A stretch of 64,000 nucleotides of DNA, taken from Isurus oxyrinchus. Lineage: Eukaryota. This document shows positions 128-53,833 of the stretch, in pieces. Under the pieces are notes generated by a model. That model did not search any database and had not been told where the DNA came from. It worked only from the letters and a program-made list of their open reading frames with translations. The first letter of the stretch is position 1, and the number at the start of each line of letters is the position of its first letter. The stretch spans positions 496,001 to 560,000 of the forward strand of contig JANJGN010000037.1 in NCBI GenBank assembly GCA_026770705.1. Direction: 5' to 3'. The position numbers and the translations under genes are program-made.

Positions 128-770
128 AGCATTGTTTTATAGTTTGCCATTTGTGAGATTTGAACTTTTGATCTTGGGGTTACAAACCAAGTACAATAAC
201 CATTTGGCTATTTAGGCCAAGCTATATCTCCCTGTAACTCTTTCGAGTACAGACACTTTTCCATCTGTTCCTATTCAGATGAAGTTACATAGTTTCATAG
301 TTTGCCATTGTGAGATTTGAACTTTTGAACTTGGGGTTGCATGCCCAGTACCATAACCACTTGGCTACTTAGGACAAGCTATATCTTCGTCTAGACCAAG
401 ACACTCAACCTCACTGTTAACCACCCGGCCAATCCATGTGTCATCCGCAAATTTACTAATCCAGGATGTAACTCTCCAGTTGGATACATCGCGTCTCTCA
501 GATCTTACACTCTCAACACCTTCGTGTGAGGAACAGGTTGGGCGGGAATTGGGTCTTTGTTGATTTGAGCAAACAGAGCAATGCAGCAATGAGAAGTTCC
601 TCACCCCCCGGCGGCTTGGGGAAGGATGGGACTCAGATATAGGAACCTGACAGGTGCTGCAAAAAGGAAAATCACATCGAATGTTTTAAAGCAGTGACGA
701 TGAATATGGAACTCAGAACCAGTTTTAGCGAATGCAATGGATTTCGTGGCCGAGCAGATCGTGCAGGAAT

Positions 771-853
771 GTCAGGGGTGCCGAGCGGTCTATGTCGCTG
801 CGTTCAAGTCACAGTCTCTTCTGGAGGCGTGGGTTCGAATCCCACTCCTGACA
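771..853 (+). pseudogene. tRNA-Leu pseudogene (Leu-CAG body, anticodon mutated to CAA)
   Basis: GTCAGGGGTGCCGAGCGGTCTATGTCGCTGCGTTCAAGTCACAGTCTCTTCTGGAGGCGTGGGTTCGAATCCCACTCCTGACA. Paralog of 35778-35860 with T8>G, D-stem and anticodon-stem mismatches and no adjacent T4. Confidence 0.85.
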
Positions 854-869
854 CTAATTCTCCTTCAGC

Positions 870-3092: not shown

Positions 3093-4897
3093 ACAAAAAC
3101 AGAATTACCTGGACAAACTCAGCAGGTCTGGCAGTATCGGCGGAGAAGAAAAGAGTTGACGTTTCAAGTCCTCATGACCCTTCGACAGAACTTGAGTTTG
3201 AGTCCAAGAAAGAGTTGAAATACAAGCTGGTTTAAGGTGTGTGTGTTGGGGGCGGAGAGATAGAGAGAGGGAGAGGTGGGGGGAGGGTGTGGTTGTCTGG
3301 ACAAACAAGCAGTGATAGAAGTAGATCATCAAAAGATGTCAACGACAATGGTACAATAGAACACATAGGTGTTAAAGTTAAAGTTGGTGATATTATCTAA
3401 ACGAATGTGCTAATTAAGAATGGATGGTAGGGCACTCAAGGTATAGCTCTACTGGGAGTGTTTTTTTCATATAATGGAAATAAGTGGGAAAAGGAAAATA
3501 TTTATAATTTATTGGAAAAAAAGGAAGGGGGAAACAGAAAGGGGGTGGGGATGGGGGAGGGAGTTCACGACCTAAAGTTGTTGAATTCAATATTCAGTCT
3601 GGAAGGCTGTAAGGTGCCTAGTCGGAAGATGAGGTGTTGTTCCTCCAGTTTGCATTGGGCTTCACTGGAACAATGCAGCAAGCCAAGGACAGACATGTGG
3701 GCAAGAGAGCAGGGTGGAGTGTTAAAATGGCAAGCGACAGGGAGGTTTGGGTCATTTTTGCGGACAGACCGCAGGTGTTCTGCAAAGCGGTCGCCCAGTT
3801 TACGTTTGGTCTCTCCAATGTAGAGGAGACCATATTGGGAGCAACGAATGCAGTAGACTAAGTTGGGGGAAATGCAAGTGAAATGCTGCTTCACTTGAAA
3901 GGAGTGTTTGGGCCCTTGGACAGTGAGGAGAGAGGAAGTGAAGGGGCAGGTGTTACATCTTTTGCGTGGGCATAGGAGGGGGTTGAGGAGTAGGGGGTGA
4001 TGGAGGAGTGGACCAGGGTGTCCCGGAGGGAGCGATCCCTACGGAATGCCGATAAGGGGGGTGAAGGGAAGATGTGTTTGGTGGTGGCATCATGCTGGAG
4101 TTGGCAGAAATGGCGGAGGATGATCCTTTGAATGCGGAGGCTGGTGGGGTGATAAGTGAGGACAAGGGGGACCCTATCATGTTTCTGGGAGGGAGGAGAA
4201 GGCATGATGGCAGATGCGCGGGAGATGGGCCAGACACTGTTGAGGGCCCTGTCAAAGACCGTGGGTGGAAAACCTCGCTTAAGGAAGAAGGAGGACATGT
4301 CAGAGGAACTGTTTTTGAAGGTAGCATCATCGGAACAGATGCGATGAAGGCGAAGGAACTGGGAGAATGGGATGGAGTCCTTACAGGAAGCGGAGTGTGA
4401 GGAGCTGTAGTCGAGGTAGCTGTGGGAGTCGGTGGGTTTGTAATGGATATTGGTGGACAGTCTATCACCAGAGATTGAGACAGAGAGGTCAAGGAAGGGA
4501 AGGGAAGTGTCAGAGATGGACCACGTGAAAATGATGGAGGGGTGGAGATTGGAAGCAAAATTAATATATTTTTCCAAGTCCCGACGAGAGCATGAAGCGG
4601 CACCGAAGTAATCATTGATGTACCGGAGAAAAAGTTGTGGAAGGGGACCGGAGTAGGACTGCAACAAGGAATGTTCCACATACCCCATAAAGAGACAGGC
4701 ATAGCTGGGGCCCATGCGGGTACCCATAGCCACACCTTTTATTTGGAGGAAGTGAGAGGAGTTGAAGGAGAAATTGTTCAGCGTGAGAACAAGTTCAGCC
4801 AGACGGAGGAGAGTAGTGGTGGATGGGGATTGTTCGGGCCTCTGTTCAAGGAAGAAGCTAAGGGCCCTCAGACCACCCTGGTGGGGGATGGAGGTGT
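3093..4897 (-). mobile_element. Penelope-like retroelement, 5'-truncated (RT C-terminal half + GIY-YIG endonuclease + tail)
   Basis: ORF 3891-4733 has AMGTRMGPSYACLF and RYIND (RYIDD motif mutated). ORF 3565-3894 has NLVYCIRC..LYIGETKRKLGDRFAEH (GIY-YIG). The two are frameshifted relative to each other. Confidence 0.93.
3154..3192 (-). ncRNA. Minimal hammerhead ribozyme motif in Penelope tail
   Basis: Minus strand AGTT-CTGTCGA-A-GGGTC-atgag-GACTT-GAAA-C-GTC-AACT. Confidence 0.6.
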
Positions 4898-5537: not shown

Positions 5538-7960
5538 TCATAGAAACATAGAAACTGGGAGCAGGAGTAGGCCATTCAGCCTTTCGACCCTGTTCCGCCA
5601 TTCATTATGGTCATGGCTGATCATCCAACTCGATAGCCTGCTCCCACTTTCTCCCCATACCCTTTGATCCCTTTCGCCCCAATAGCTATATCTAAGTTCT
5701 TCTTGTTTTGGTCTCAATTGCTTTCTGTGGTAACGAATTCCACAGGCTCACCATTCTCTGGGTGAATAAATTTCTATTGATCTCAGTCCTAATGGTCTAG
5801 CCCATATCCTCAGACTGTGACCCCTGGTTCTGGGCACCCTCACCATCCGGAACATAATTCCTGCATCTACCCTGTCTTGTACTGTTATAATTTTATAGGT
5901 TTCTATGAGATCCTCATTCTTCTGAATTCCAGCGAATATAATCCTAATCGACTCAATATCTCCTCATATGCCAGTCCGGCCATCCCTAGAATCAGTTGGG
6001 TAAACATTTGCTGCACTCCCTCTATAACAAGTACATCCTTCCTCAGATAAGGAGACCAAAACTGCACACAGTATTTCAGATGTGGTCTCACCAAAGTCCT
6101 GTACAATTGAAGCAAGGCATCCCTGTTCCTGTACTCGAATCCTGTGGCTCTGAAGGCCAACATACCATTTTCCTTCTAGACCACCTGCTGAACCCGCATG
6201 CTTACCTTCAGTGACTGGTGTACAAGGACATCCAGGTCTCGTTGCACATTCCCCTCTCAATTTATAGCCATTCAGATAATAATCTGCCTTCCTGTTTTTT
6301 GCTACCAAAACGGATAACCTCACATTTACCCACATTATACAGCATCTACCATGCATCTGCCCACTTCGTTCAGCTTGTCCAAATCACACTGAAGCATCTC
6401 CAAATACCCCTCAAAGCTCACCCTCCCACCCAGCCTTGTGTCATCTGAAAATTTGGAGATATTACGTTTAATTCCCTCATCTAAATCATTAATATATATT
6501 GTGAATAACTGGGGTCCCAGCACCGATCCCTGCAGTATCCCACTAAGCACTGCCTGCTACTCGGAAAAAGACCCGTTTATTCCTACTCTTTGTTTCCTGT
6601 CTGCCAAACTGTTTTCTATCCATCTCAATATGCTACCCCCAATCCCCTGCGCTTTAATTTTAGATGCCAACCTTTTCCATGGGACTTTGTGGAAAGCTTT
6701 ATGAAAGTCCAAATAAACCACATCCACTGGCTCCCCCTCATCAACTCTACTAGTTACATCCTTGAAAGATTCCAATAGATTTATCAAGCATGATTTCCCT
6801 TTCATAATTCCATGCTGATTCTGTCCGATTCTGCCATTGTTTTCCACGTGATCAGCTATTAAATCTTTTATAACAGACTCTGAAATTTTCCCCACAACCG
6901 GCCTCAGGCTGACTGGTCTATAATTCCCTGTTTTCTCTCTGCCTCCCTTTTTAAATAGTGGGGTTACATTAGTTAACCTCCGATGTATAGGAACTGTTCT
7001 GGAGTTTATAGAATCTCGGAAGTTGAGCACCAATGCATCCATTATTTCTAGGGCCACTTCCTTAAGTACTCTGAGATGTAGATTATCAGACCCTGGGGCT
7101 TTATCGGCCTTCAATCCCATCAATTTCCCCAACACCATCTCCCAACTAATACTGATTTCTTTCAGTTCCTCCCTCTCACTAACCCTGTGTTCCCCAACAT
7201 TTCTGGTATGTTATTCGTGTCCTCCATTGAGAAGACAGAACAAAAGTATTTATTTAGTTGGTCAGCCATTTCTTTGTTCCCCATTATAAATTCCCCTGTT
7301 TCAGTCTGTAAGTGACCCTCATTTGTCTTCACCAATATTTTTCTCTTCACACACCTATAGAAACCTTTACAGTCAGTTTTTATGTTCCCTGCAAACTTAC
7401 ATTCGTACTCTGTTTTCCCCTTCTTAATCAATCCCTTAATCCTCTATTGCTCAATTCTAAACTGCTCCCAATCCTCAGGTCTGTTGTTTTTTCTAGCCAA
7501 TTTGTATGCCTCTTCCTTGGATCTAATACTATCTCTAATTTCCATTGTAAGCCATGGATTGGCCACCTTTCCTGTTTTATTTTTGAGCCAGACTGGAATA
7601 AACAAATGTTGCAGTTCACCCATGCGCTCCTTGAATGTTTGCCATCGCCCACCCTCCATTATCCCTTTAAGTAATGTTTCCCAATCCATCGTAGCCAACT
7701 CACACCTCATACAATTGTAGTTTCCTTTATTAAGATTCAAGACCAAAGTCTCAGAATTAACTACATCACTCCTCAGCTTGAAGAATTCTATCATATTATG
7801 GTCACTCATCCCCAAGGGAACTCGCACAACCAGATTGCCAATTATTCTTTTCACATTACACGATACCCAGTTGAGGATGGCCTGTTCTCTCGTTGGTTCC
7901 TCAATGTATTGGTCCAGAAAAAACATCTCGTGTACACTTCAGGAATTCCTCCTGTACGGT
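5538..7960 (-). mobile_element. CR1 LINE (HER1-like) ORF2 fragment, decayed
   Basis: Minus ORFs contain QYIEEPTREQAIL, KAPGSDNLHLRVLKE, GNYRPVSL, VYLDFHKAFHKVP, QGSVLGPQLFTIYINDL and KFSDD. CR1 3' UTR with (TTCTATG) tail at 5538. Confidence 0.92.
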
Positions 7961-10471: not shown

Positions 10472-13400
10472 GAATTACACCTGCACAGGACAGGGACTGA
10501 TGTCCTAGGGGGAATATTTGCTAGAGTGGTTGGGGAGGGATTAAACTAAAATGGCAGGGGGCTGGGAACCTATGCAAGGAGTCAGAGAACGGGGAATTAC
10601 GGACAAGAACAAAAGACAGAAAGGGGAATATGATAACTGATGAGCAGAGATAACAAGGGCAAGAATCAAACAGGGCCTCAGTGAAAAATAGTGGGAACAG
10701 GAGAAGTAATGTTAAAAATACAAGCCTTAAGACTTTGTGCCTTAACGCGGGGAGCATTCACAATAAAGTGGATGAATTAACCGCACAAATAGATGTAAAC
10801 AGGTATGATATAGTCGGGATTATGGAGACATGACTGCACGGAGACCAGGGATGGGAACTGAACATCCAAGGGTATTCAGTATTTAGGAAGGACAGACAAA
10901 AAGGTAAGGGCGATGGATTTGCATTGCTGGTTAAAGAGCAAATTAATGCAATAGTGAGGAAAGATATTAGCTCCGATGATATGGAACCTGTATGGATAGA
11001 GCTGAGAAATGTTAAGGGGCAAAAAATATTAGTGAGGGTTGTGTATAGTCCCAAACTGTAGTGGTGACTTTGGGAATGTCATTGAACAGGAAATTAGAGA
11101 TGCATGCAATAAAGGCACATCTGTAATTATGGGTGACTTTAATCTGCATATAGATTGGGCAAATCAAATTAGTAATAATACCGTAGAGGAATTATTCCTG
11201 GAGTGCATACGGAATGGTTTTCTTCAGCAATACGTTGAGGAACCAACTCGAGAACAGGCCATCCTAGACTGGGTATTATATAATGAGAAAAGAATAGTTG
11301 GCAATCTAGTTGTGCGAGGCCCTTTGGGGATGAGCAACCATAATCTGATAGAATTCTTCATCAAGATGGAGAGTGACATAATTGATTCTGAGACTAGGGC
11401 CCTGAATCTTAATAAAGGAAACTGTGATGATATGAGGTGAGAGTTGGCTGTGATGGATTTGGAAACATTACTTAAAGGGATGGCAGTGGATAGGCAATGG
11501 CAAACATTGAAAAAGTGTATGGGTGAACTGCAACAATTGTTTATTACTGTCTGGCACAAGAATAAAACAGGAAAGGTGGTCAATCCATGGCTTACAAGGG
11601 AAATTAGAGATAGTATGAAATACAAGGAAGAGGTATACAAATTAGCCAGAAAAAACAACAGGCCTGAGAATTGGGAGCAGTTTAGAATTCAGCAAAGGAA
11701 GATGAAAGGATTGATTAAGAATGGGAAAACGAGTACGAGAGTAAGCTTGCGGGGAACATAAAAACTGACTGTAAATTTTCTATAGGCATGTGAAGATAAA
11801 AAGCTTGGTAAAGACAAATGTAGGTCCCTTACAGACAGAAACAGTGGAATTTATAATGGGGAACAAAGAAATGGTTGTGCAACAAAATACATACTTTTGA
11901 CAGTTCTGTCTTCACAAAGGAAGACACAAATAACATACCAGAAATGGTGGGGAACACAGGGTTTAGTGAGAAGGAGGAACTGAACAAAATCAGTATTAGT
12001 AGGGAAATGGAGTTGGGGAAATTGATAGGATTGAAGGCCGATAAATCCCCACTGCCTGATCATCTACATCCCAGAGTAATTAAGGAAGTAACCCTAGAAA
12101 TAGTGGATGCATTGGTGGTCATCTTCCGAGATTCCACAGACTCTAGAAAGTTCCTACAGATTGGAGGGTAGCGAAGGTAACCCCACTAATTAAAAAGGGA
12201 GATAGAGAGAAAACAGGGAATTATACACCAGTCAGCCTGATGTCAGTAGAGGGAAAAATTCTAGAGTACATTATAAAGGATTTAATAGCTGAGCACTTGG
12301 AAAACAGTGGGAGAAACAGAGAGAGTCAGCATGGATTTATGAAAGGGAAATCTTGCTTAACAACTCTACTGGAATTTGGTTTATTTGGACTTTCAGAAGG
12401 CTTTCGACAAAGTCCCACATAAGAGATTACTGTGTAAAATTAAAGCACATGGGATTGGGGGTAGTGTATTCAGATGGATAGAAAACTGGTTGGCAAACAA
12501 GAAACAAAAGGTAGGAATAAATAAGTGTTTATCCGAATGGCAGGCAGTGACTAGTGGGGAACAGCAGGGATTGGTGCTGGGACCCTAGCTATTGACAATA
12601 TATATTAATGATTTAGATGAGGGAACTAAATGTAGTTTCTCCAAATTTGCAGATGAGACAAAGGTGAGTGGGAGGGTGAGCTGTGAGGAGTGTGCAGAGA
12701 TGATTCAGTATAATTTGGGCAAGCTGGCTGAGTGGGCAAATGCATGGCCGATGCAGTATAATGTGGATAAATGTGAGGTTATCCAATTTGGTAGTAAAAA
12801 CAGGAAGGCAGATTATCTGGATGGCTGTAAATTGAGAGAGGGGAATGTGCAACGAGAACTCAGTGTCCTTGTACACCAGTCACTGAAGATAAGCATACAT
12901 GTGCAGTAGGCAGAAAATAAGGCAAATGGTATGTTGCCCTTCATAGGGAGAGAATTCGAGTACAGGAGCAGAGATGTCTTGCTGCAATTATACAGGGCCT
13001 TGGTGAGTCCACATCTGGAATATTGTGTGCAGTTTTGGTCTGCTTATCTGAGGAAGGAAGTTATTGCTTTAGAGGGAGTGCAGCGAAGGTTTACCAGACT
13101 GATTCCTGGGATGGCGGGACTGACATCTGAAGAGAGATCGAGTCGGTTAGGATTATATTCGCTGGAGTTCCGAAGAATGAGGGGGGATCGCATAGAAACA
13201 TATAAATTTCTCACAGGAGTAGACAGAGTAGATGCAGGAAGGATGTTCCCGATGGTGGGGGGAGTCCAGAACCATGGGTCACAGTCTGAGGAAACGTGGT
13301 ACAGCATTTAGCATTGAGATGAGGAGGAATTACTTCGCCCAGAGAGTGGTGAGTCTGTGAAATTCGCTATCACAGAATGTAGTTGAGGCCAAAACATTGT

Positions 13401-27780: not shown

Positions 27781-28271
27781 CACAGCAAAGGAAAGACGAC
27801 AGAAGACATTTCACTCCAAGGAGAGGCTGAAGTAGATTGTTAGTTGAAGAAATGTCACAGGCAATGAGAGATAAACACCCACAGTTGAAAGAGACCGACT
27901 TTTTATCACGGCAGGGAGAGAGATTGTAGCATGAATTTCGACTCCCAGTGCTTATGGTCAGCGCCCCAGTACAAGCTGAATGGTTTGCACACTGCCCGCT
28001 AGACTAAAAAACGAAGCTAGAATTTTATTTAATCATCGTAAAATTTTCAATCAGATCGGCCCTGAAACATAGATATTCACGATAGTACAGGAAACGTCAT
28101 AACTTGTGTCTGATATCACAGCCTTAAATTCAGATAATCATGGAATGATTAGCGACATTATCCCGACACCACCTCCTCTGGAAACCTGGTCTCGGAACGA
28201 TTGCACCCATGATATCAGACATTTCTTCTGAGAAAAGCACCCCGTTCACGAAGAACCCGTTAATAAAGTGA

Positions 28272-28353
28272 CGACGAAGGCGGAATTCGAACCCTCGCGT
28301 GCAAAGCACAATGGATAAGTAGTCCATCGCCTTAACCTCTCGGCCACCTCATT
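28272..28353 (-). pseudogene. tRNA-Ser (GCT body) with anticodon ACT, probable pseudogene
   Basis: AATGAGGTGGCCGAGAGGTTAAGGCGATGGACTACTTATCCATTGTGCTTTGCACGCGAGGGTTCGAATTCCGCCTTCGTCG. A and B boxes intact; A1-C72 and T-stem mismatches; T at position 37. Confidence 0.8.
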
Positions 28354-28875
28354 GTGAGCTCTTTCCTATTAAACCTCCTCCTATACTGTTTTGCATCCAT
28401 GAACTGTTGAACTAAATGAACCTGCTTGTTTCAGGTCCTGAATAACCATCCAGGTATCTCATGTAGTTTGTCAATAAAATACATTTCCAATCACATCAGG
28501 TCGAAAGTGTAAATCGACTGATGTGAATCACTTCAACACTTCAACATGATATCCAACATGTTTCTAGACTGAGTGAAAACCCACCGCGGAAAGACCGAAA
28601 CATACATTCATCTGGAAGAATAAAGAAACCCCTTCCGGCTCAGTGAAAGTACCGGAACACAGCTGACATGTGGTCTTTCATTCAAGACTGTAACTGACAG
28701 CAATCAACATCCGACTGAACACACAAGGAGAAAGTTGCCGTATTCGATGCATTAGGAGAAACTTTGCGTTGGTTTTCTGTGTTGTGATTTATTCTCTGCA
28801 ATGATTTCCCGGATGTTCAAAGCTGGTCCTGATTTCCCAAACTGGCACCGCCTCGAGCACACGAATTAATGTATT

Positions 28876-28879
28876 AAAA
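28876..28879 (-). terminator. Pol III terminator (T4) of tRNA-Pro(TGG)
   Basis: TTTT 8 nt downstream of the tRNA 3' end on the minus strand. Confidence 0.6.
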
Positions 28880-28887
28880 TGCTGGGT

Positions 28888-28978
28888 GGGCTCGTCCGGG
28901 AATTGAACCCGGGACCTCTCGCATATTAATTTATTACAAACACCCAAAGCGAGAATCATACCCCTAGACCAACGAGCC
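28888..28978 (-). tRNA. tRNA-Pro(TGG) with 19-nt intron (28924-28942)
   Basis: Exon 1 GGCTCGTTGGTCTAGGGGTATGATTCTCGCTTTGGG (36 nt), intron TGTTTGTAATAAATTAATA, exon 2 TGCGAGAGGTCCCGGGTTCAATTCCCGGACGAGCCC (36 nt). The spliced 72-nt product matches the vertebrate Pro consensus except for one T-loop base. Confidence 0.93.
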
Positions 28979-29184
28979 AGCTGCCGCAGGAAAGGGTTTC
29001 AACATATCCTTTCATTGTCACCCACAGGAAATTAACAAACTGCGAAAAACTGTGGATGCTGGAAATCTTTTGGAATAAATTAGAAATCCCGGGGTCTACT
29101 CCAACCAGTATAATTTGACTTCAGTTTTGTTGGGTTTCTCAATGTCACACACTGCCACATCCTTCGGTATAGTCAACTGTAGTC

Positions 29185-35777: not shown

Positions 35778-35860
35778 TGTCAGGAGTGGGATTCGAACCC
35801 ACGCCTCCAGAGGAGACTGCGACCTGAACGCAGCGCCTTAGACCGCTCGGCCATCCTGAC
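35778..35860 (-). tRNA. tRNA-Leu(CAG), intact
   Basis: GTCAGGATGGCCGAGCGGTCTAAGGCGCTGCGTTCAGGTCGCAGTCTCCTCTGGAGGCGTGGGTTCGAATCCCACTCCTGACA matches the vertebrate Leu-CAG consensus. Confidence 0.97.
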
Positions 35861-36839
35861 TCCGTTACTACTGCCTGCATAAATCGTTTTGAATTCCACA
35901 TTCATCGTCACTGCTTTCAAAAACTCGATGTGATTTTCCTTTTTGCAGCACCTGTCAGGTTCCTGTATCTGAGTCCCATCCTTCCCCAAGCCGCCGGGGG
36001 GTGAGGAGCTTCTCATTGCTGCATTGTTCTGTTTGCTCAAATCAACAAAGACCCAATTCCCGCCCGACCTGCTCCTCACACGAAGGTGATGAGAGTGTAA
36101 GATCTGAGCGAAGTGAAGTATCCAATTGGAGATTTACATCCTGCCGACAGGAATATCTCTCCACAGCTGCATTCGGACCTGTTGAATATTTCCAGCATTT
36201 CCTGTTTCTGATTTTGTGCCTTCATTACAGGAGATCTTTTTACTGACAATCCAAAGCTTGTCTCAGTGCAGCTCCAGGCACCGCTTTCCTGTGACCTTTA
36301 AAGTCGCTGTTTTCACACTCATCGCTCTGCGCCATGGCTTTCAACCCCCACCACCACCACCACACCTCCACCACCCCCACCCCCGCAACTCCCTCTCTGT
36401 CCCCGGTCCCCGCGCCCCACTACCGTCCCCTCTCCCGCCTGCTCAGCTCTCAGGTCGTCTTAGCGTTGTTTTTTTATCGGAATTCGGAAGGGCCCAGAGT
36501 CTGTGAGGGAATATAAGGGGTTAATCCACATTCACATACAGGGAACTGTGACTCTCTTAAGATGGACGGAAGTTGGTGTCCCTTCCAGATCCACTAAGAG
36601 GTCGAGTTACTGGAGCTGTGGGAATTTCTGCCATTTCTATCCCACAGTGAGTCGCGCCTCCCCGTTGGTCCGGCTGGGATGGTGATGGCTAAAGTGAGTG
36701 TCCGAGAAAGCGGGTCGTCCCCATGTCCCTCTTGGGCTTGTTTCCCCTCATCCAGCTGTAAGGGGGCGGGGGGTTGAGTTTGTGGGCTGGGGGCGGTATC
36801 TTGCTGGTTTGAGCACATTTCCCTGTCTCTCACTGTGTG

Positions 36840-41944: not shown

Positions 41945-42785
41945 GTGGTTACCGTCTGTCCCTCGATACGAGGATGACATCCACTCAGGGCCGTGAGTTT
42001 CTGCCATGGGCCTTCATGAGAGTGAACAGGCCGATTTTCAGCCCACAGACCTTTGGACACGTGGGGACAGGGTGTCCCGCGAGGTAGTGAGATCCAAAGT
42101 GCAGGATTTGCTTCCTGTTACTTCTTCTTAGCCGCCGTTCTGCCTCATCATTAAGACCCTGGGGACTCACAGCGTGCTGCAGCTTGGGGGACACGTTTTG
42201 GTCATTTTGAATGGTGAGAAGCAAGCTCCTCACAGTCATTAATATGAATGCTGCAGCGTTTGAATTAACGTTTCAGAGTGTCTTTGGAGCATTTTCTAAA
42301 TCCTCCCCTGGAATGTTTTCCATTTGAGAGTTGAGGAAACAGGACTTGGCGGATGCGACGCTTTTCGATTATCAGGACACAGTGTGCACTCCATCCAAGT
42401 TAATTTTTCAGAAACAAAAACAAAAATACTTGGAAAAGATTAGCAGGTCTGACAGCATCTGCGGAGAGGGATACAGTTAACATTTCGAGTCCGAATGACT
42501 CTTCATCAGTTGATCAGTCATATGGACTCGAAACGTTAACTGTATGCCTCTCCGCAGATGCTGTCAGACGTGCTGAGTTATTCCAGGTATTTTTGTTTTT
42601 GTTCTACATTTCCAGCATCCACAGTATTTTGCTTTTATCTTAAGTTTTCAGGAGTTTGGCCTGAATGCTGATGGAGTTGCCTTCAAGAACGACACCACAG
42701 TTTGTTCGGCAGTGCTCCCACGGAACCTGGAGGGTGCAGCGGAGACATTGCGGATGGAATTTATCTACCGCTCTTATGAATCCCC
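41945..42785 (-). mobile_element. RTE-clade LINE 3' fragment, interrupted at 42412-42639
   Basis: Minus translation LGWSAHCV..RRIRQVLFPQLSNGKHSRGGFRKCSKDTLK resembles the RTE C-terminus (LRWAGHV..GKRSRGG.RKR.KDTLK). Confidence 0.75.
42412..42639. mobile_element. Fold-back insertion of two inverted Penelope tails, 12-bp candidate TSD
   Basis: Arms 42412-42509 and 42517-42604 are reverse complements. Flanks TTAATTTTTCAG (42400-42411) and TTAAGTTTTCAG (42640-42651). Confidence 0.8.
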
Positions 42786-43602: not shown

Positions 43603-43692
43603 CAATCACGACAGGACTCGAAAGTGCAATCTTCTGATAACCTCTTCAAATACCACCGAAATTAGACGCCTTATCCATTAGGTCACACGGTC
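43603..43692 (-). pseudogene. tRNA-Arg(TCG) with 17-nt intron (43639-43655), probable pseudogene
   Basis: GACCGTGTGACCTAATGGATAAGGCGTCTAATTTCGG[TGGTATTTGAAGAGGTT]ATCAGAAGATTGCACTTTCGAGTCCTGTCGTGATTG. Arg-TCG body with broken T, anticodon and acceptor stems. Confidence 0.82.
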
Positions 43693-46247: not shown

Positions 46248-46769
46248 AGAACTTAAGAGTATTGAGTCTGGAAGGCTGTAAAGTGCCTAGTTGGAAGATG
46301 AGGTGTTGTCCTCTAATTCGTGTTGGGCTTCACTGGAACAATGTAGCAAGCCAAGGACAGACATGTGGGCAAGAGAGCAGGGTGGAGTGTTAAAATGGCA
46401 AGCGACAGGGAGGTTTGGGTCACACTTGTGGACAGACCGCAGGTGTTCTGCAAAGCGGTCACCAGTTTACATTTGGTCTCTCCAATGTAGAGGAGACCGC
46501 ATTGGGAGCAACGAATGCAGTAGACTAAGTTGGGGGAAATGCAGGTGAAATGCTGCTTCACTTGAAAGGAGTGTTTGGACCCTTGGACAGTGAGAAGAGA
46601 GGAAGTGAAGGGGCAGGTGTTGCATCTTTTGCATGGGCATGGGGAGGTGCCATAGGTGGGGGTTGAGGAGTAGGGGGTGATGGAGGAGTCGACCAGGGTG
46701 TCACCTCCCCATGCCCACAGAAAAGATGCAACAGCTGCCCCTTCACTTCCTCTCTGCTCACCATCCAAG
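46248..46769 (-). mobile_element. Penelope-like GIY-YIG fragment with terminal inversion (46702-46769)
   Basis: Highly similar to 3590-4020; minus translation CKRCNTC..NLVYCIRCSQCGLLYIGETK. Confidence 0.9.
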
Positions 46770-49790: not shown

Positions 49791-50213
49791 TTGTTTATTA
49801 CCTTTATACTAAAATATCGATCGAGGTGAAACGGCTCACTTTCTGCTCAGTACAATTCCTGGATTACAAACAAAATATTATCAAATCAAATTCACACTAT
49901 GGGGCGACCAGACCTGGCCGTCTCAGAGAAGTTTACAATTCTCTCAGAGAATACAACAGCTGAATGCTTTCATCCAGAAAATGGGGTTGTCTAAGTAGTA
50001 TGTTCGGGTAACATTACAGTGCGATCAAGTGGGCAATTGTTTTTTTTTTTCAATTGCCTTCATTTCCTTCATGTGTGTTTCATTGATGAGTTCTCTGCAA
50101 TGGTGGGTCCAGTTCCCAAACTTACCCCTGATATAAGCAAACCGCTCTACCTAGACCGCAATGAGTTTTAGGCAATGCACTGGGCGATTTACACGACAAA
50201 TAACAACACGTGA

Positions 50214-50300
50214 GAGCTCGCCTGAGATTTGAAAGAGACCGCTCACATTCTCACTTATGAAACGTCCCATAGCGAGAATCACACGGTGAGACCAATAATT
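50214..50300 (-). pseudogene. Decayed intron-containing tRNA-Pro(TGG) (intron ~50248-50265)
   Basis: TTGGTCTCACCGTGTGATTCTCGCTATGGG[ACGTTTCATAAGTGAGAA]TGTGAGCGGTCTCTTTCAAATCTCAGGCGAGCTC; shares its 3' flank with 50685. Confidence 0.75.
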
Positions 50301-50684
50301 TAACTGAATGTATATAACTCAGCCAATATAGACATTCATTTGCACCCAAAAGATATCAGCCATTCTTTCAGAGCGCTCTAGGTAAAAGAGAACATTGAAG
50401 AAATACACCAGGCAGTGTGTAGGCCAGGCAGTATCCATGGAGACGGCAAGAAATCTCAAGTTTCAGTTACACTCATTCTCTTCTTGGGATAAATTAACTC
50501 ATTCTCTTATGAGGATAAATTAACCGTCCGATTACATGAGCAACAGTTTCTTCATTTACTCAACGTGTTTTGCAGGAATAATTTCGTTATCAGGACTTCT
50601 CAGGTTCTAAAAACTCGCCCGGGTGTAAGTTAAACCCGCCTTTTCCCTCTTAAAAAAACATGCATCACAAGTGATAACACACGA

Positions 50685-50774
50685 GAGCTCGTCCAGGATT
50701 TGAACCCGGGACCTATCGCACGATCATTTTACGAAAACCCCGAAGCGAGAATCATACCTCTAGACCAACGAGCC
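50685..50774 (-). tRNA. tRNA-Pro(CGG) with 18-nt intron (50721-50738), possibly impaired
   Basis: Exon 1 GGCTCGTTGGTCTAGAGGTATGATTCTCGCTTCGGG, intron GTTTTCGTAAAATGATCG, exon 2 TGCGATAGGTCCCGGGTTCAAATCCTGGACGAGCTC. C27-T43 mismatch and two G-U pairs; T7 at 50652-50658. Confidence 0.82.
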
Positions 50775-50869
50775 TGCCACAGGTAAGTGAGATAACCGCT
50801 ATGTGCATTCATTGTCCTCCAGATTGCGTCAACCCTCCTTTGCGTTTCTGTCGTAACACCAGAAAACAA

Positions 50870-53742: not shown

Positions 53743-53833
53743 CGACTCTGGTGGGACTCGAACCCACAACCTTTGAATTCCTTTTCCAACAGCAGCTAGA
53801 AGTCCAACACGCTATCCGTTGCGCCACAGAGCC
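53743..53833 (-). tRNA. tRNA-Arg(TCT) with 18-nt intron (53779-53796), intact
   Basis: GGCTCTGTGGCGCAACGGATAGCGTGTTGGACTTCTA[GCTGCTGTTGGAAAAGGA]ATTCAAAGGTTGTGGGTTCGAGTCCCACCAGAGTCG, the standard vertebrate intron-containing isotype. Confidence 0.95.

What the first reader, a model, noticed from the sequence alone, without database searches (positions are those of the whole stretch)
28888..28978. Intact intron-containing tRNA-Pro(TGG) in a vertebrate-type genome
Seen: two 36-nt exons matching the vertebrate Pro consensus are split one base 3' of the anticodon (37/38) by a 19-nt AT-rich insert. The antepenultimate intron base (A) can pair with U32, the anticodon-intron pair used by TSEN, and a T4 terminator follows. 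Established: well-supported vertebrate intron-containing tRNAs are Tyr-GTA, Ile-TAT, Leu-CAA and Arg-TCT; Pro-TGG introns are known from yeast. Inference: a lineage-specific extension of tRNA splicing to proline tRNAs, possibly yielding new intronic circular RNAs or intron-dependent modification. I cannot verify whether this has been published.
Basis: partly seen in the sequence, partly recalled or inferred. Interest (0 to 1): 0.85.

Follow-up and report, generated by a model that had tools for sequence, protein, structure and literature searches.

The report
Intron-bearing proline tRNA gene in shark
A structurally intact proline tRNA gene interrupted by a 19-base intron at the usual tRNA-intron site sits in a shark tRNA cluster beside related copies with the same kind of insert, which is unusual for an animal, but whether it is transcribed and spliced could not be tested here.

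Summary
On the minus strand at 28888-28978 lies a tRNA-Pro(TGG) gene with two 36-nt exons and a 19-nt insert (17 of 19 A/T) between positions 37 and 38. ARAGORN calls it and Rfam tRNA scores it 47.8 bits, E 4e-7. A T4 run follows 9-12 nt downstream.

It is not a one-off. The window also holds a Pro(CGG) gene with an 18-nt insert at the same site (39.6 bits) and a decayed third copy.

Between the two good copies the exons are 66/72 identical. The intron (12/20 columns) and upstream flank (47/87) are far more diverged. This argues for long selection on the exons, and so for removal of the insert.

Splicing was not shown.

A 2025 paper says introns are "essentially absent" from metazoan tRNAs other than Tyr, Ile-UAU, Leu-CAA and Arg-UCU. 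[quoted passage not shown]

The scan had noted further intron-bearing Pro copies on other DNA of this genome.

Verdict: a probable new member of a known kind, of moderate interest.

The parts
28943..28978 (-). 5' exon of tRNA-Pro(TGG), tRNA positions 1-37 (36 nt, no position 17); holds the A-box region and the anticodon
28924..28942 (-). 19-nt intron at the canonical 37/38 site, 17/19 A/T. Its third-last base A can pair with U32.
   Evidence: ARAGORN i(36,19); Rfam insert; read; the centroid fold leaves both junctions unpaired
28888..28923 (-). 3' exon, tRNA positions 38-73 (36 nt), with intact anticodon-stem, T-arm and acceptor 3' strands
28876..28879 (-). TTTT run, a candidate Pol III terminator 9-12 nt downstream of the gene
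   Evidence: read
29009..29019 (-). Upstream motif GACRATGAAWG, 31-41 nt before the gene, shared with Pro(CGG) and Leu(CAG) genes of the window. A candidate upstream promoter element (inference).
   Evidence: 3 exact matches in 64 kb, all upstream of tRNA genes
50685..50774 (-). Paralog tRNA-Pro(CGG) with an 18-nt insert (50721-50738) at the same site. It has one C-U mismatch in the anticodon stem and two G-U pairs, lacks an anticodon-intron pair (U32 against U), and a T7 run lies downstream.
   Evidence: ARAGORN i(37,18); Rfam 39.6 bits; read
50213..50302 (-). Decayed third Pro(TGG)-type copy with an 18-nt insert at the same site. The 5' acceptor strand is lost and there is no Rfam match.
43603..43692 (-). 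Arg(TCG)-type tRNA relic with a 17-nt insert at the same site (pseudogene-grade)
   Evidence: Rfam 16.4 bits, below the 29 gathering score; ARAGORN only at the lowered threshold
53743..53833 (-). Canonical vertebrate-type intron-containing tRNA-Arg(TCT), used as the in-window comparator; C32 can pair with the third-last intron base G
   Evidence: Rfam 54.3 bits; ARAGORN i(37,18); read

Best explanation
This is a functional nuclear tRNA-Pro(UGG) gene of a shark that carries a genuine protein-spliced tRNA intron.

Inferred pathway: RNA polymerase III transcribes a precursor of about 100 nt from the internal A and B boxes, perhaps helped by the shared upstream motif, and stops at the T4 run. The tRNA splicing endonuclease (TSEN) measures from the mature body to the 37/38 site and uses the U32-A pair with the third-last intron base to cut the 3' junction. 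RTCB ligase then joins the two 36-nt halves into a 72-nt tRNA-Pro.

Shown here: the gene anatomy, the family of copies with inserts at the same site, and the excess conservation of exons over intron and flank.

Inferred, not shown: transcription, cleavage and ligation.
For: 1. The tRNA body is intact: Rfam 47.8 bits, E 4e-7, with all acceptor, anticodon and T-stem pairs standard. ARAGORN agrees.

2. The insert lies exactly at the canonical site. U32 can pair with the third-last intron base A. Both junctions are unpaired in the centroid fold, which keeps the acceptor, anticodon and T stems.

3. The in-window canonical Arg(TCT) intron gene has the same layout: an 18-nt intron with a C32-G pair.

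4. A second Pro gene (CGG, 39.6 bits) and a decayed third copy carry 18-nt inserts at the same site.

5. Between copy 1 and copy 2 the exons are 66/72 identical: 5' exon 34/36, 3' exon 32/36 counted by eye. The intron is 12/20 aligned columns and the 80-nt upstream flank 47/87. Fisher tests give p 0.0018 for exon against intron and 8e-8 for exon against flank; intron against flank is not different, p 0.80. A disabling insert would have let the exons decay like the flank, as they did in copy 3 (24/37).

6. The 3 exact matches of an 11-nt upstream motif in 64 kb all lie 31-49 nt before tRNA genes, namely both good Pro copies and an intact intronless Leu(CAG) gene.

7. A TTTT run follows the gene.

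8. [quoted passage not shown]
Against: - There is no RNA evidence at all.
- No orthologue from another species was seen.
- Only this copy has every feature. Copy 2 has a C-U mismatch in the anticodon stem and no anticodon-intron pair (U against U). Copy 3 and the Arg(TCG) locus are relics. The scan's notes call one further Pro copy elsewhere a 'relic'. The family may therefore be mostly dying.
- Intron homology between copies is weak on its own: 14 of 500 shuffles reach the c1-c2 score, 138/500 for c1-c3 and 91/500 for c2-c3.
- The upstream similarity may partly be a shared motif rather than common descent, which weakens the flank as a neutral yardstick.
- Concerted evolution with intronless Pro genes could keep the exons alike without selection on this locus.
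- The fold z-score is unremarkable (-1.5), and beyond the single U32-A pair the intron pairs poorly with the anticodon loop (my reading).
- Published surveys find introns essentially absent from other metazoan tRNAs and treat isolated predictions as low confidence.
Confidence: 0.58

Rival explanations
1. This is a dying or dead tRNA-Pro gene lineage. An ancestral Pro gene took an 18-19-nt insertion in its anticodon loop, was copied within the tRNA cluster by segmental duplication, and the copies are decaying. Copy 1 merely looks intact, either because it is the least decayed or because its exons were patched by conversion from working intronless Pro genes. No splicing takes place.
For: - Of the 4 loci in the window with non-canonical inserts, 2 are clear relics: copy 3 has no Rfam match and Arg(TCG) scores 16.4 bits.
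- Copy 2 has stem defects and no anticodon-intron pair.
- The scan's notes call another Pro copy a relic.
- No RNA evidence exists.
- Surveys say such introns are essentially absent in animals.
Against: - Copy 1 has no structural defect in 72 nt, while the flank and intron shared with copy 2 are near saturation.
- Copy 2 also keeps 39.6 bits.
- Conversion from intronless genes that spanned both exons would have removed the insert.
- The insert keeps its length (19, 18, 18 nt) and exact site in all three Pro copies.
- The upstream motif and terminator are retained.
Confidence: 0.3
2. The locus is transcribed by Pol III but serves something other than decoding. An unspliced or half-processed tRNA-like RNA could give small RNAs, or the gene could act as a TFIIIC-bound chromatin boundary in the cluster. 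On this reading the exons are kept for promoter and folding reasons only.
For: - Internal promoter regions, the upstream motif and the terminator are intact.
- The Squalomix preprint speculates that shark tRNA loci may regulate genomic readout.
- Introns change the insulator activity of yeast tRNA genes (passage from PMC4090602).
Against: - Conservation covers all stems, the anticodon loop and the acceptor end, not only the A and B boxes.
- Nothing in the window points to a special chromatin role.
- No RNA data are available.
Confidence: 0.1

Closest known systems
Saccharomyces cerevisiae tRNA-Pro(UGG) genes (10 intron-containing genes; PMC4090602, passages seen)
   Same: Same isoacceptor and the same canonical 37/38 intron site. 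The intron is short and removed by the protein endonuclease-ligase pathway.
   Different: Fungal, not animal. In yeast every gene of the family has the intron and splicing is shown by experiment. Here only the gene structure is known, and it is unknown whether intronless Pro genes coexist. No sequence relationship between the introns was tested.
Vertebrate intron-containing tRNA genes: Tyr-GUA, Ile-UAU, Leu-CAA, Arg-UCU (PMC10275265; PMC12530127), with an Arg(TCT) example in this window at 53743-53833
   Same: Same gene layout: an 18-19-nt intron at 37/38, position 32 able to pair with the third-last intron base, and a T-run terminator. The presumed enzymes, TSEN and RTCB, are also the same.
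   Different: The anticodon is UGG (Pro), outside the four families in which metazoan introns are reported to be prevalent. No intron-dependent modification is known to me for tRNA-Pro.
[quoted passage not shown]
   Same: Same animal group and the same general phenomenon. tRNAscan-SE predictions with score 50 or more include many intron-containing loci in shark genomes.
   Different: The passages I saw give no isotype, no Pro or Arg(UCG) example, no exon-versus-intron comparison and no expression data. The figure was not visible to me and supplements were closed.
Lineage-specific tRNA intron gains in yeasts, e.g. Lachancea tRNA-Ala(UGC), and Leu(CAG) by anticodon switch (PMC4090602 section 18, read)
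   Same: An isoacceptor carries an intron in one lineage but not in its relatives. The intron can spread to a sister anticodon by a single anticodon change, as seems to have happened here between Pro(TGG) and Pro(CGG).
   Different: Those cases are fungal and rest on whole-genome comparisons across species, which I could not do here.

Membership tests
Eukaryotic nuclear tRNA gene with a canonical protein-spliced intron | Complete cloverleaf tRNA body once the insert is removed | tested here: met
   Rfam RF00005 gives 47.8 bits (gathering 29), E 4e-7, model 1-71. Acceptor, anticodon and T stems are all standard pairs. ARAGORN agrees.
Eukaryotic nuclear tRNA gene with a canonical protein-spliced intron | Intervening sequence between positions 37 and 38, one base 3' of the anticodon | tested here: met
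   ARAGORN reports i(36,19). The Rfam alignment puts 22 letters where the model has 3 in the anticodon loop. The sequence was read. A one-base shift is equally possible because T flanks both ends.
Eukaryotic nuclear tRNA gene with a canonical protein-spliced intron | Anticodon-intron (A-I) base pair between position 32 and the third-last intron base (named as critical in PMC10485636) | tested here: met
   U32 and A at intron position -3, read. The MFE and centroid folds do not form this pair on their own, so it is possible rather than predicted.
Eukaryotic nuclear tRNA gene with a canonical protein-spliced intron | Splice junctions in single-stranded stretches next to the anticodon helix | tested here: met
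   In the centroid structure the anticodon stem is formed and both junctions are unpaired. The overall z-score is only -1.5.
Eukaryotic nuclear tRNA gene with a canonical protein-spliced intron | Pol III signals: internal A and B boxes and a downstream T run | tested here: inconclusive
   TTTT lies 9-12 nt downstream. The conserved D- and T-loop positions of the Rfam model are present. The box consensus itself is recalled and was not scored by any tool.
Eukaryotic nuclear tRNA gene with a canonical protein-spliced intron | Precursor is made and spliced to a mature tRNA | not testable with these tools
Eukaryotic nuclear tRNA gene with a canonical protein-spliced intron | Exons conserved more than the intron among family members | tested here: met
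   For c1 against c2: exons 66/72, intron 12/20 columns, upstream 47/87 (plus an eye count). Fisher p 0.0018 and 8e-8. This rests on only two good copies.
Canonical metazoan/vertebrate intron-bearing isoacceptors (Tyr-GUA, Ile-UAU, Leu-CAA, Arg-UCU) | Anticodon is one of these four | tested here: not met
   The anticodon is TGG, Pro. It works like these genes but is not one of them.
tRNA pseudogene or tRNA-derived repeat | Broken stems, a sub-threshold model score, a lost terminator or a SINE-like tail | tested here: not met
   None of these applies to 28888-28978. They do apply to copy 3 (no Rfam match) and to the Arg(TCG) locus (16.4 bits).

The most novel reading that the evidence does not exclude
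Sharks underwent a datable, 'modern' gain of a tRNA intron in a vertebrate. An ancestral proline tRNA gene acquired an intron of about 18 nt. The intron then spread through the Pro family by duplication and an anticodon switch (UGG to CGG), and a similar event hit Arg(UCG). As a result, a substantial part or all of proline decoding in these animals depends on the tRNA splicing endonuclease. This would break the reported rule that metazoan tRNA introns are confined to Tyr, Ile-UAU, Leu-CAA and Arg-UCU. It would also give a vertebrate system for asking how and why tRNA introns are gained.
Probability: 0.2. Interest if true: 0.75.

Novelty: new member of a known kind. Interest (0 to 1): 0.5.

Why it matters
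Why eukaryotes keep tRNA introns, and how a tRNA gene can gain one, are open questions (PMC4090602 section 18; PMC12168002). Current surveys hold that animal tRNA introns are confined to four isoacceptor families.

A working intron-bearing proline tRNA family in sharks would add a new natural substrate class for vertebrate TSEN. It would also offer a case of intron gain, and of spread to a sister anticodon, that can be dated by comparing shark, ray and chimaera genomes. [quoted passage not shown]

If the loci turn out to be dead, the finding instead warns that the shark counts of intron-containing tRNA loci are inflated by insert-bearing relics.

Tried and rejected
RNA and cross-species evidence:
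- The look-up of sequencing runs listed 20 holders, none on record as RNA. They belong to two coded organisms, A with a share of about 0.5 and B with about 0.29.

Taxon:
- The protein-atlas search on a reverse-transcriptase ORF said only Eukaryota, with Chordata or Arthropoda commonest.
- The label 'shark' comes from earlier agents' notes and my recollection of such retroelement ORFs. No test of mine supports it.

Literature (10 of 10 searches used):
- Searches found no paper naming an intron in a vertebrate tRNA-Pro gene.
- One search was badly designed (any 2 of 6 terms) and returned nothing relevant.
- The review by Schmidt and Matera (2020) is not held.
- PMC2888827 holds nothing on shark tRNA introns.
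- Figures were not visible and supplements were closed. The isotype tables behind Fig. 3A of the Squalomix preprint and Fig. S7 of PMC12168002 may already list Pro introns, and so may GtRNAdb itself.

Method point: whole-window Rfam scans missed the Pro(CGG) gene, which a local scan scores at 39.6 bits. ARAGORN at a lowered threshold (103 calls) is mostly noise and was not used for counts.

Rejected readings:
- A SINE or retroposed mature tRNA is ruled out, since an insert is present and a terminator lies 9 nt downstream.
- A chance match is ruled out (E 4e-7).
- Arg(TCG) arising by anticodon switch from the intron-bearing Arg(TCT) gene is ruled out, because the two bodies differ.

Full report
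1. Observation.

ARAGORN finds a tRNA-Pro(tgg) at 28888-28978 on the minus strand. With intron search switched on it reports a 19-nt intron after the anticodon. The Rfam tRNA model matches the same 91 bases over its full length at 47.8 bits (gathering score 29, E 4e-7), with 22 letters where the model has 3 in the anticodon loop.

Reading the strand gives this layout:
- 5' exon 28943-28978 (36 nt)
- insert 28924-28942 (19 nt, 17 A/T)
- 3' exon 28888-28923 (36 nt)
- TTTT at 28876-28879

All pairs of the acceptor, anticodon and T stems are standard, and one D-stem pair is flagged. Position 32 is U and the third-last intron base is A, so the anticodon-intron pair named as critical for TSEN (PMC10485636, passages) can form. 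In the centroid fold the three long stems form and both junctions are unpaired, although the energy is not unusual (z -1.5). The claim that the exons equal a vertebrate Pro consensus was not tested by any search.

2. Context.

With introns allowed, ARAGORN's default threshold gives 7 tRNA genes in the 64 kb. They include:
- Arg(TCT) at 53743-53833, a canonical vertebrate-type intron gene (54.3 bits), with an 18-nt intron and a C32-G pair.
- Pro(CGG) at 50685-50774, with an 18-nt insert at the same site.

Whole-window Rfam scans missed the Pro(CGG) gene, but a local scan scores it at 39.6 bits. It has a C-U mismatch in the anticodon stem, two G-U pairs and no anticodon-intron pair.

About 400 nt downstream of it lies a third, decayed Pro-type copy (about 50213-50302), again with an 18-nt insert at the same site. 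It has no Rfam match.

An Arg(TCG)-type locus at 43603-43692 also has a 17-nt insert there but scores only 16.4 bits.

The 5' half of the Pro gene matches only 2 places in the window at 3 or fewer mismatches. No intronless Pro gene is therefore present in this window.

Earlier notes of the scan list two more insert-bearing Pro loci on other pieces of this genome. I could not see or test them.

3. Is the insert tolerated or disabling?

I compared copy 1 (TGG) with copy 2 (CGG):
- 5' exons: 34/36 identical, one of the two differences being the anticodon.
- 3' exons: 32/36, counted by eye.
- Introns: 12 of 20 aligned columns with gaps; 14 of 500 shuffles score as well.
- 80-nt upstream flanks: 47 of 87 columns; 0 of 500 shuffles score as well.

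Exons are significantly more alike than the intron (Fisher p 0.0018) or the flank (8e-8). Intron and flank do not differ (p 0.80).

The simplest reading is an old duplication of a gene that already had the insert. Intron and flanks then drifted while the exons stayed under selection. For a tRNA this implies the insert is removed. Copy 3 shows what relaxed selection looks like (24/37 in the 5' exon).

Caveats:
- There are only two good copies.
- The introns are short.
- Part of the flank similarity is a motif also found upstream of an unrelated Leu(CAG) gene.
- Concerted evolution among tRNA genes is known (PMC4090602 section 18).

4. Mechanism.

By analogy with the Arg(TCT) gene in the same window, and with the human TSEN literature, I infer the following. 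Pol III transcribes the gene. TSEN selects the splice sites by distance from the mature body plus the U32-A pair. RTCB ligates the halves. None of these steps was observed.

I worked beside that part from then on. No RNA run held the locus (0 of 20 holders).

5. Comparison with what is known.

- Human introns occur in Tyr-GUA, Ile-UAU, Arg-UCU and Leu-CAA genes (PMC10275265, passages).
- About 7% of predicted animal tRNA genes have introns (PMC12168002, section 12).
- Yeast tRNA-Pro(UGG) genes all carry introns (PMC4090602, passages).
- Lineage-specific gains, and spread by anticodon switch, are documented in yeasts (section 18).
[quoted passage not shown] The passages I saw give no isotype detail.

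In ten full-text searches I found no paper naming a vertebrate tRNA-Pro intron. Figures and supplements were not visible, and GtRNAdb itself could not be consulted.

6. Verdict.

The locus has the features of a real intron-containing tRNA gene and belongs to a small family with inserts at the same site. Two members still score as tRNAs and have exons conserved well beyond intron and flank.

Function as a spliced tRNA-Pro is the best explanation (about 0.58). A decaying insert-bearing lineage is the main rival (about 0.3).

It is a new member of a known kind: the canonical tRNA intron in an isoacceptor and animal group where it is not described by name. The phenomenon has been partly anticipated at the level of total counts. 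That the genome is a shark rests on earlier agents' notes, not on a test of mine.

Noticed in passing
window 29009-29019, 35899-35909, 50806-50816 (all minus strand); 696-706 (+) with 1 mismatch: An 11-nt motif, GACRATGAAWG, has 3 exact matches in 64 kb. All lie 31-49 nt upstream of tRNA genes: Pro-TGG, Leu-CAG and Pro-CGG. A 1-mismatch copy lies 65-75 nt upstream of the Leu-CAA-like gene. With 1 mismatch or fewer there are 11 matches against 6.3 expected (4 of 100 shuffles reach 11), so only the exact matches are telling. It may be a shared upstream Pol III element of this tRNA cluster.
   Followed up: partly
window 771-854 (+) and 35778-35860 (-): The 'tRNA-Leu(CAA)' at 771-854 has no intron and no Rfam tRNA match at the gathering score. 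It aligns with the intact Leu(CAG) gene, flanks included, at 87% mean column identity. It is therefore a decayed Leu(CAG) paralog with an anticodon change, not a member of the intron-bearing Leu(CAA) family.
   Followed up: partly
window 28270-28354 (-): A Ser-type tRNA-like gene with the unexpected anticodon ACT lies 530 nt downstream of the Pro gene. Rfam scores it 33.6 bits with four non-standard pairs. It is probably a pseudogene.
   Followed up: no
window 43603-43692 (-): An Arg(TCG)-type tRNA relic has a 17-nt insert at the canonical intron site. Rfam scores it 16.4 bits, below threshold. Its body differs from the intron-bearing Arg(TCT) gene, so this is a separate insert-bearing lineage.
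   Followed up: partly
window 50685-50774 (-): Method point: the Pro(CGG) gene was missed by both whole-window Rfam scans but scores 39.6 bits when 701 bases are scanned alone. The speed filters can therefore lose intron-bearing tRNAs in window-wide scans.
   Followed up: yes
window 46589-46763 and 42454-42562 (both strands): Sub-threshold matches to plant and insect microRNA precursor models occur on both strands: MIR1858 at 56 and 46 bits, mir-999 at 38 and 35 bits. This suggests long palindromic hairpins, perhaps MITE-like repeats.
   Followed up: no
window 3891-4733 (-), 6557-7138 (-), 7444-7926 (-), 11039-11440 (+), 12931-13311 (+): Fragmentary retroelement ORFs are present. The nearest Atlas clusters of the ORF at 6557-7138 carry the reverse-transcriptase domain PF00078. 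The tRNA cluster is thus embedded in decayed non-LTR retrotransposon copies.
   Followed up: partly
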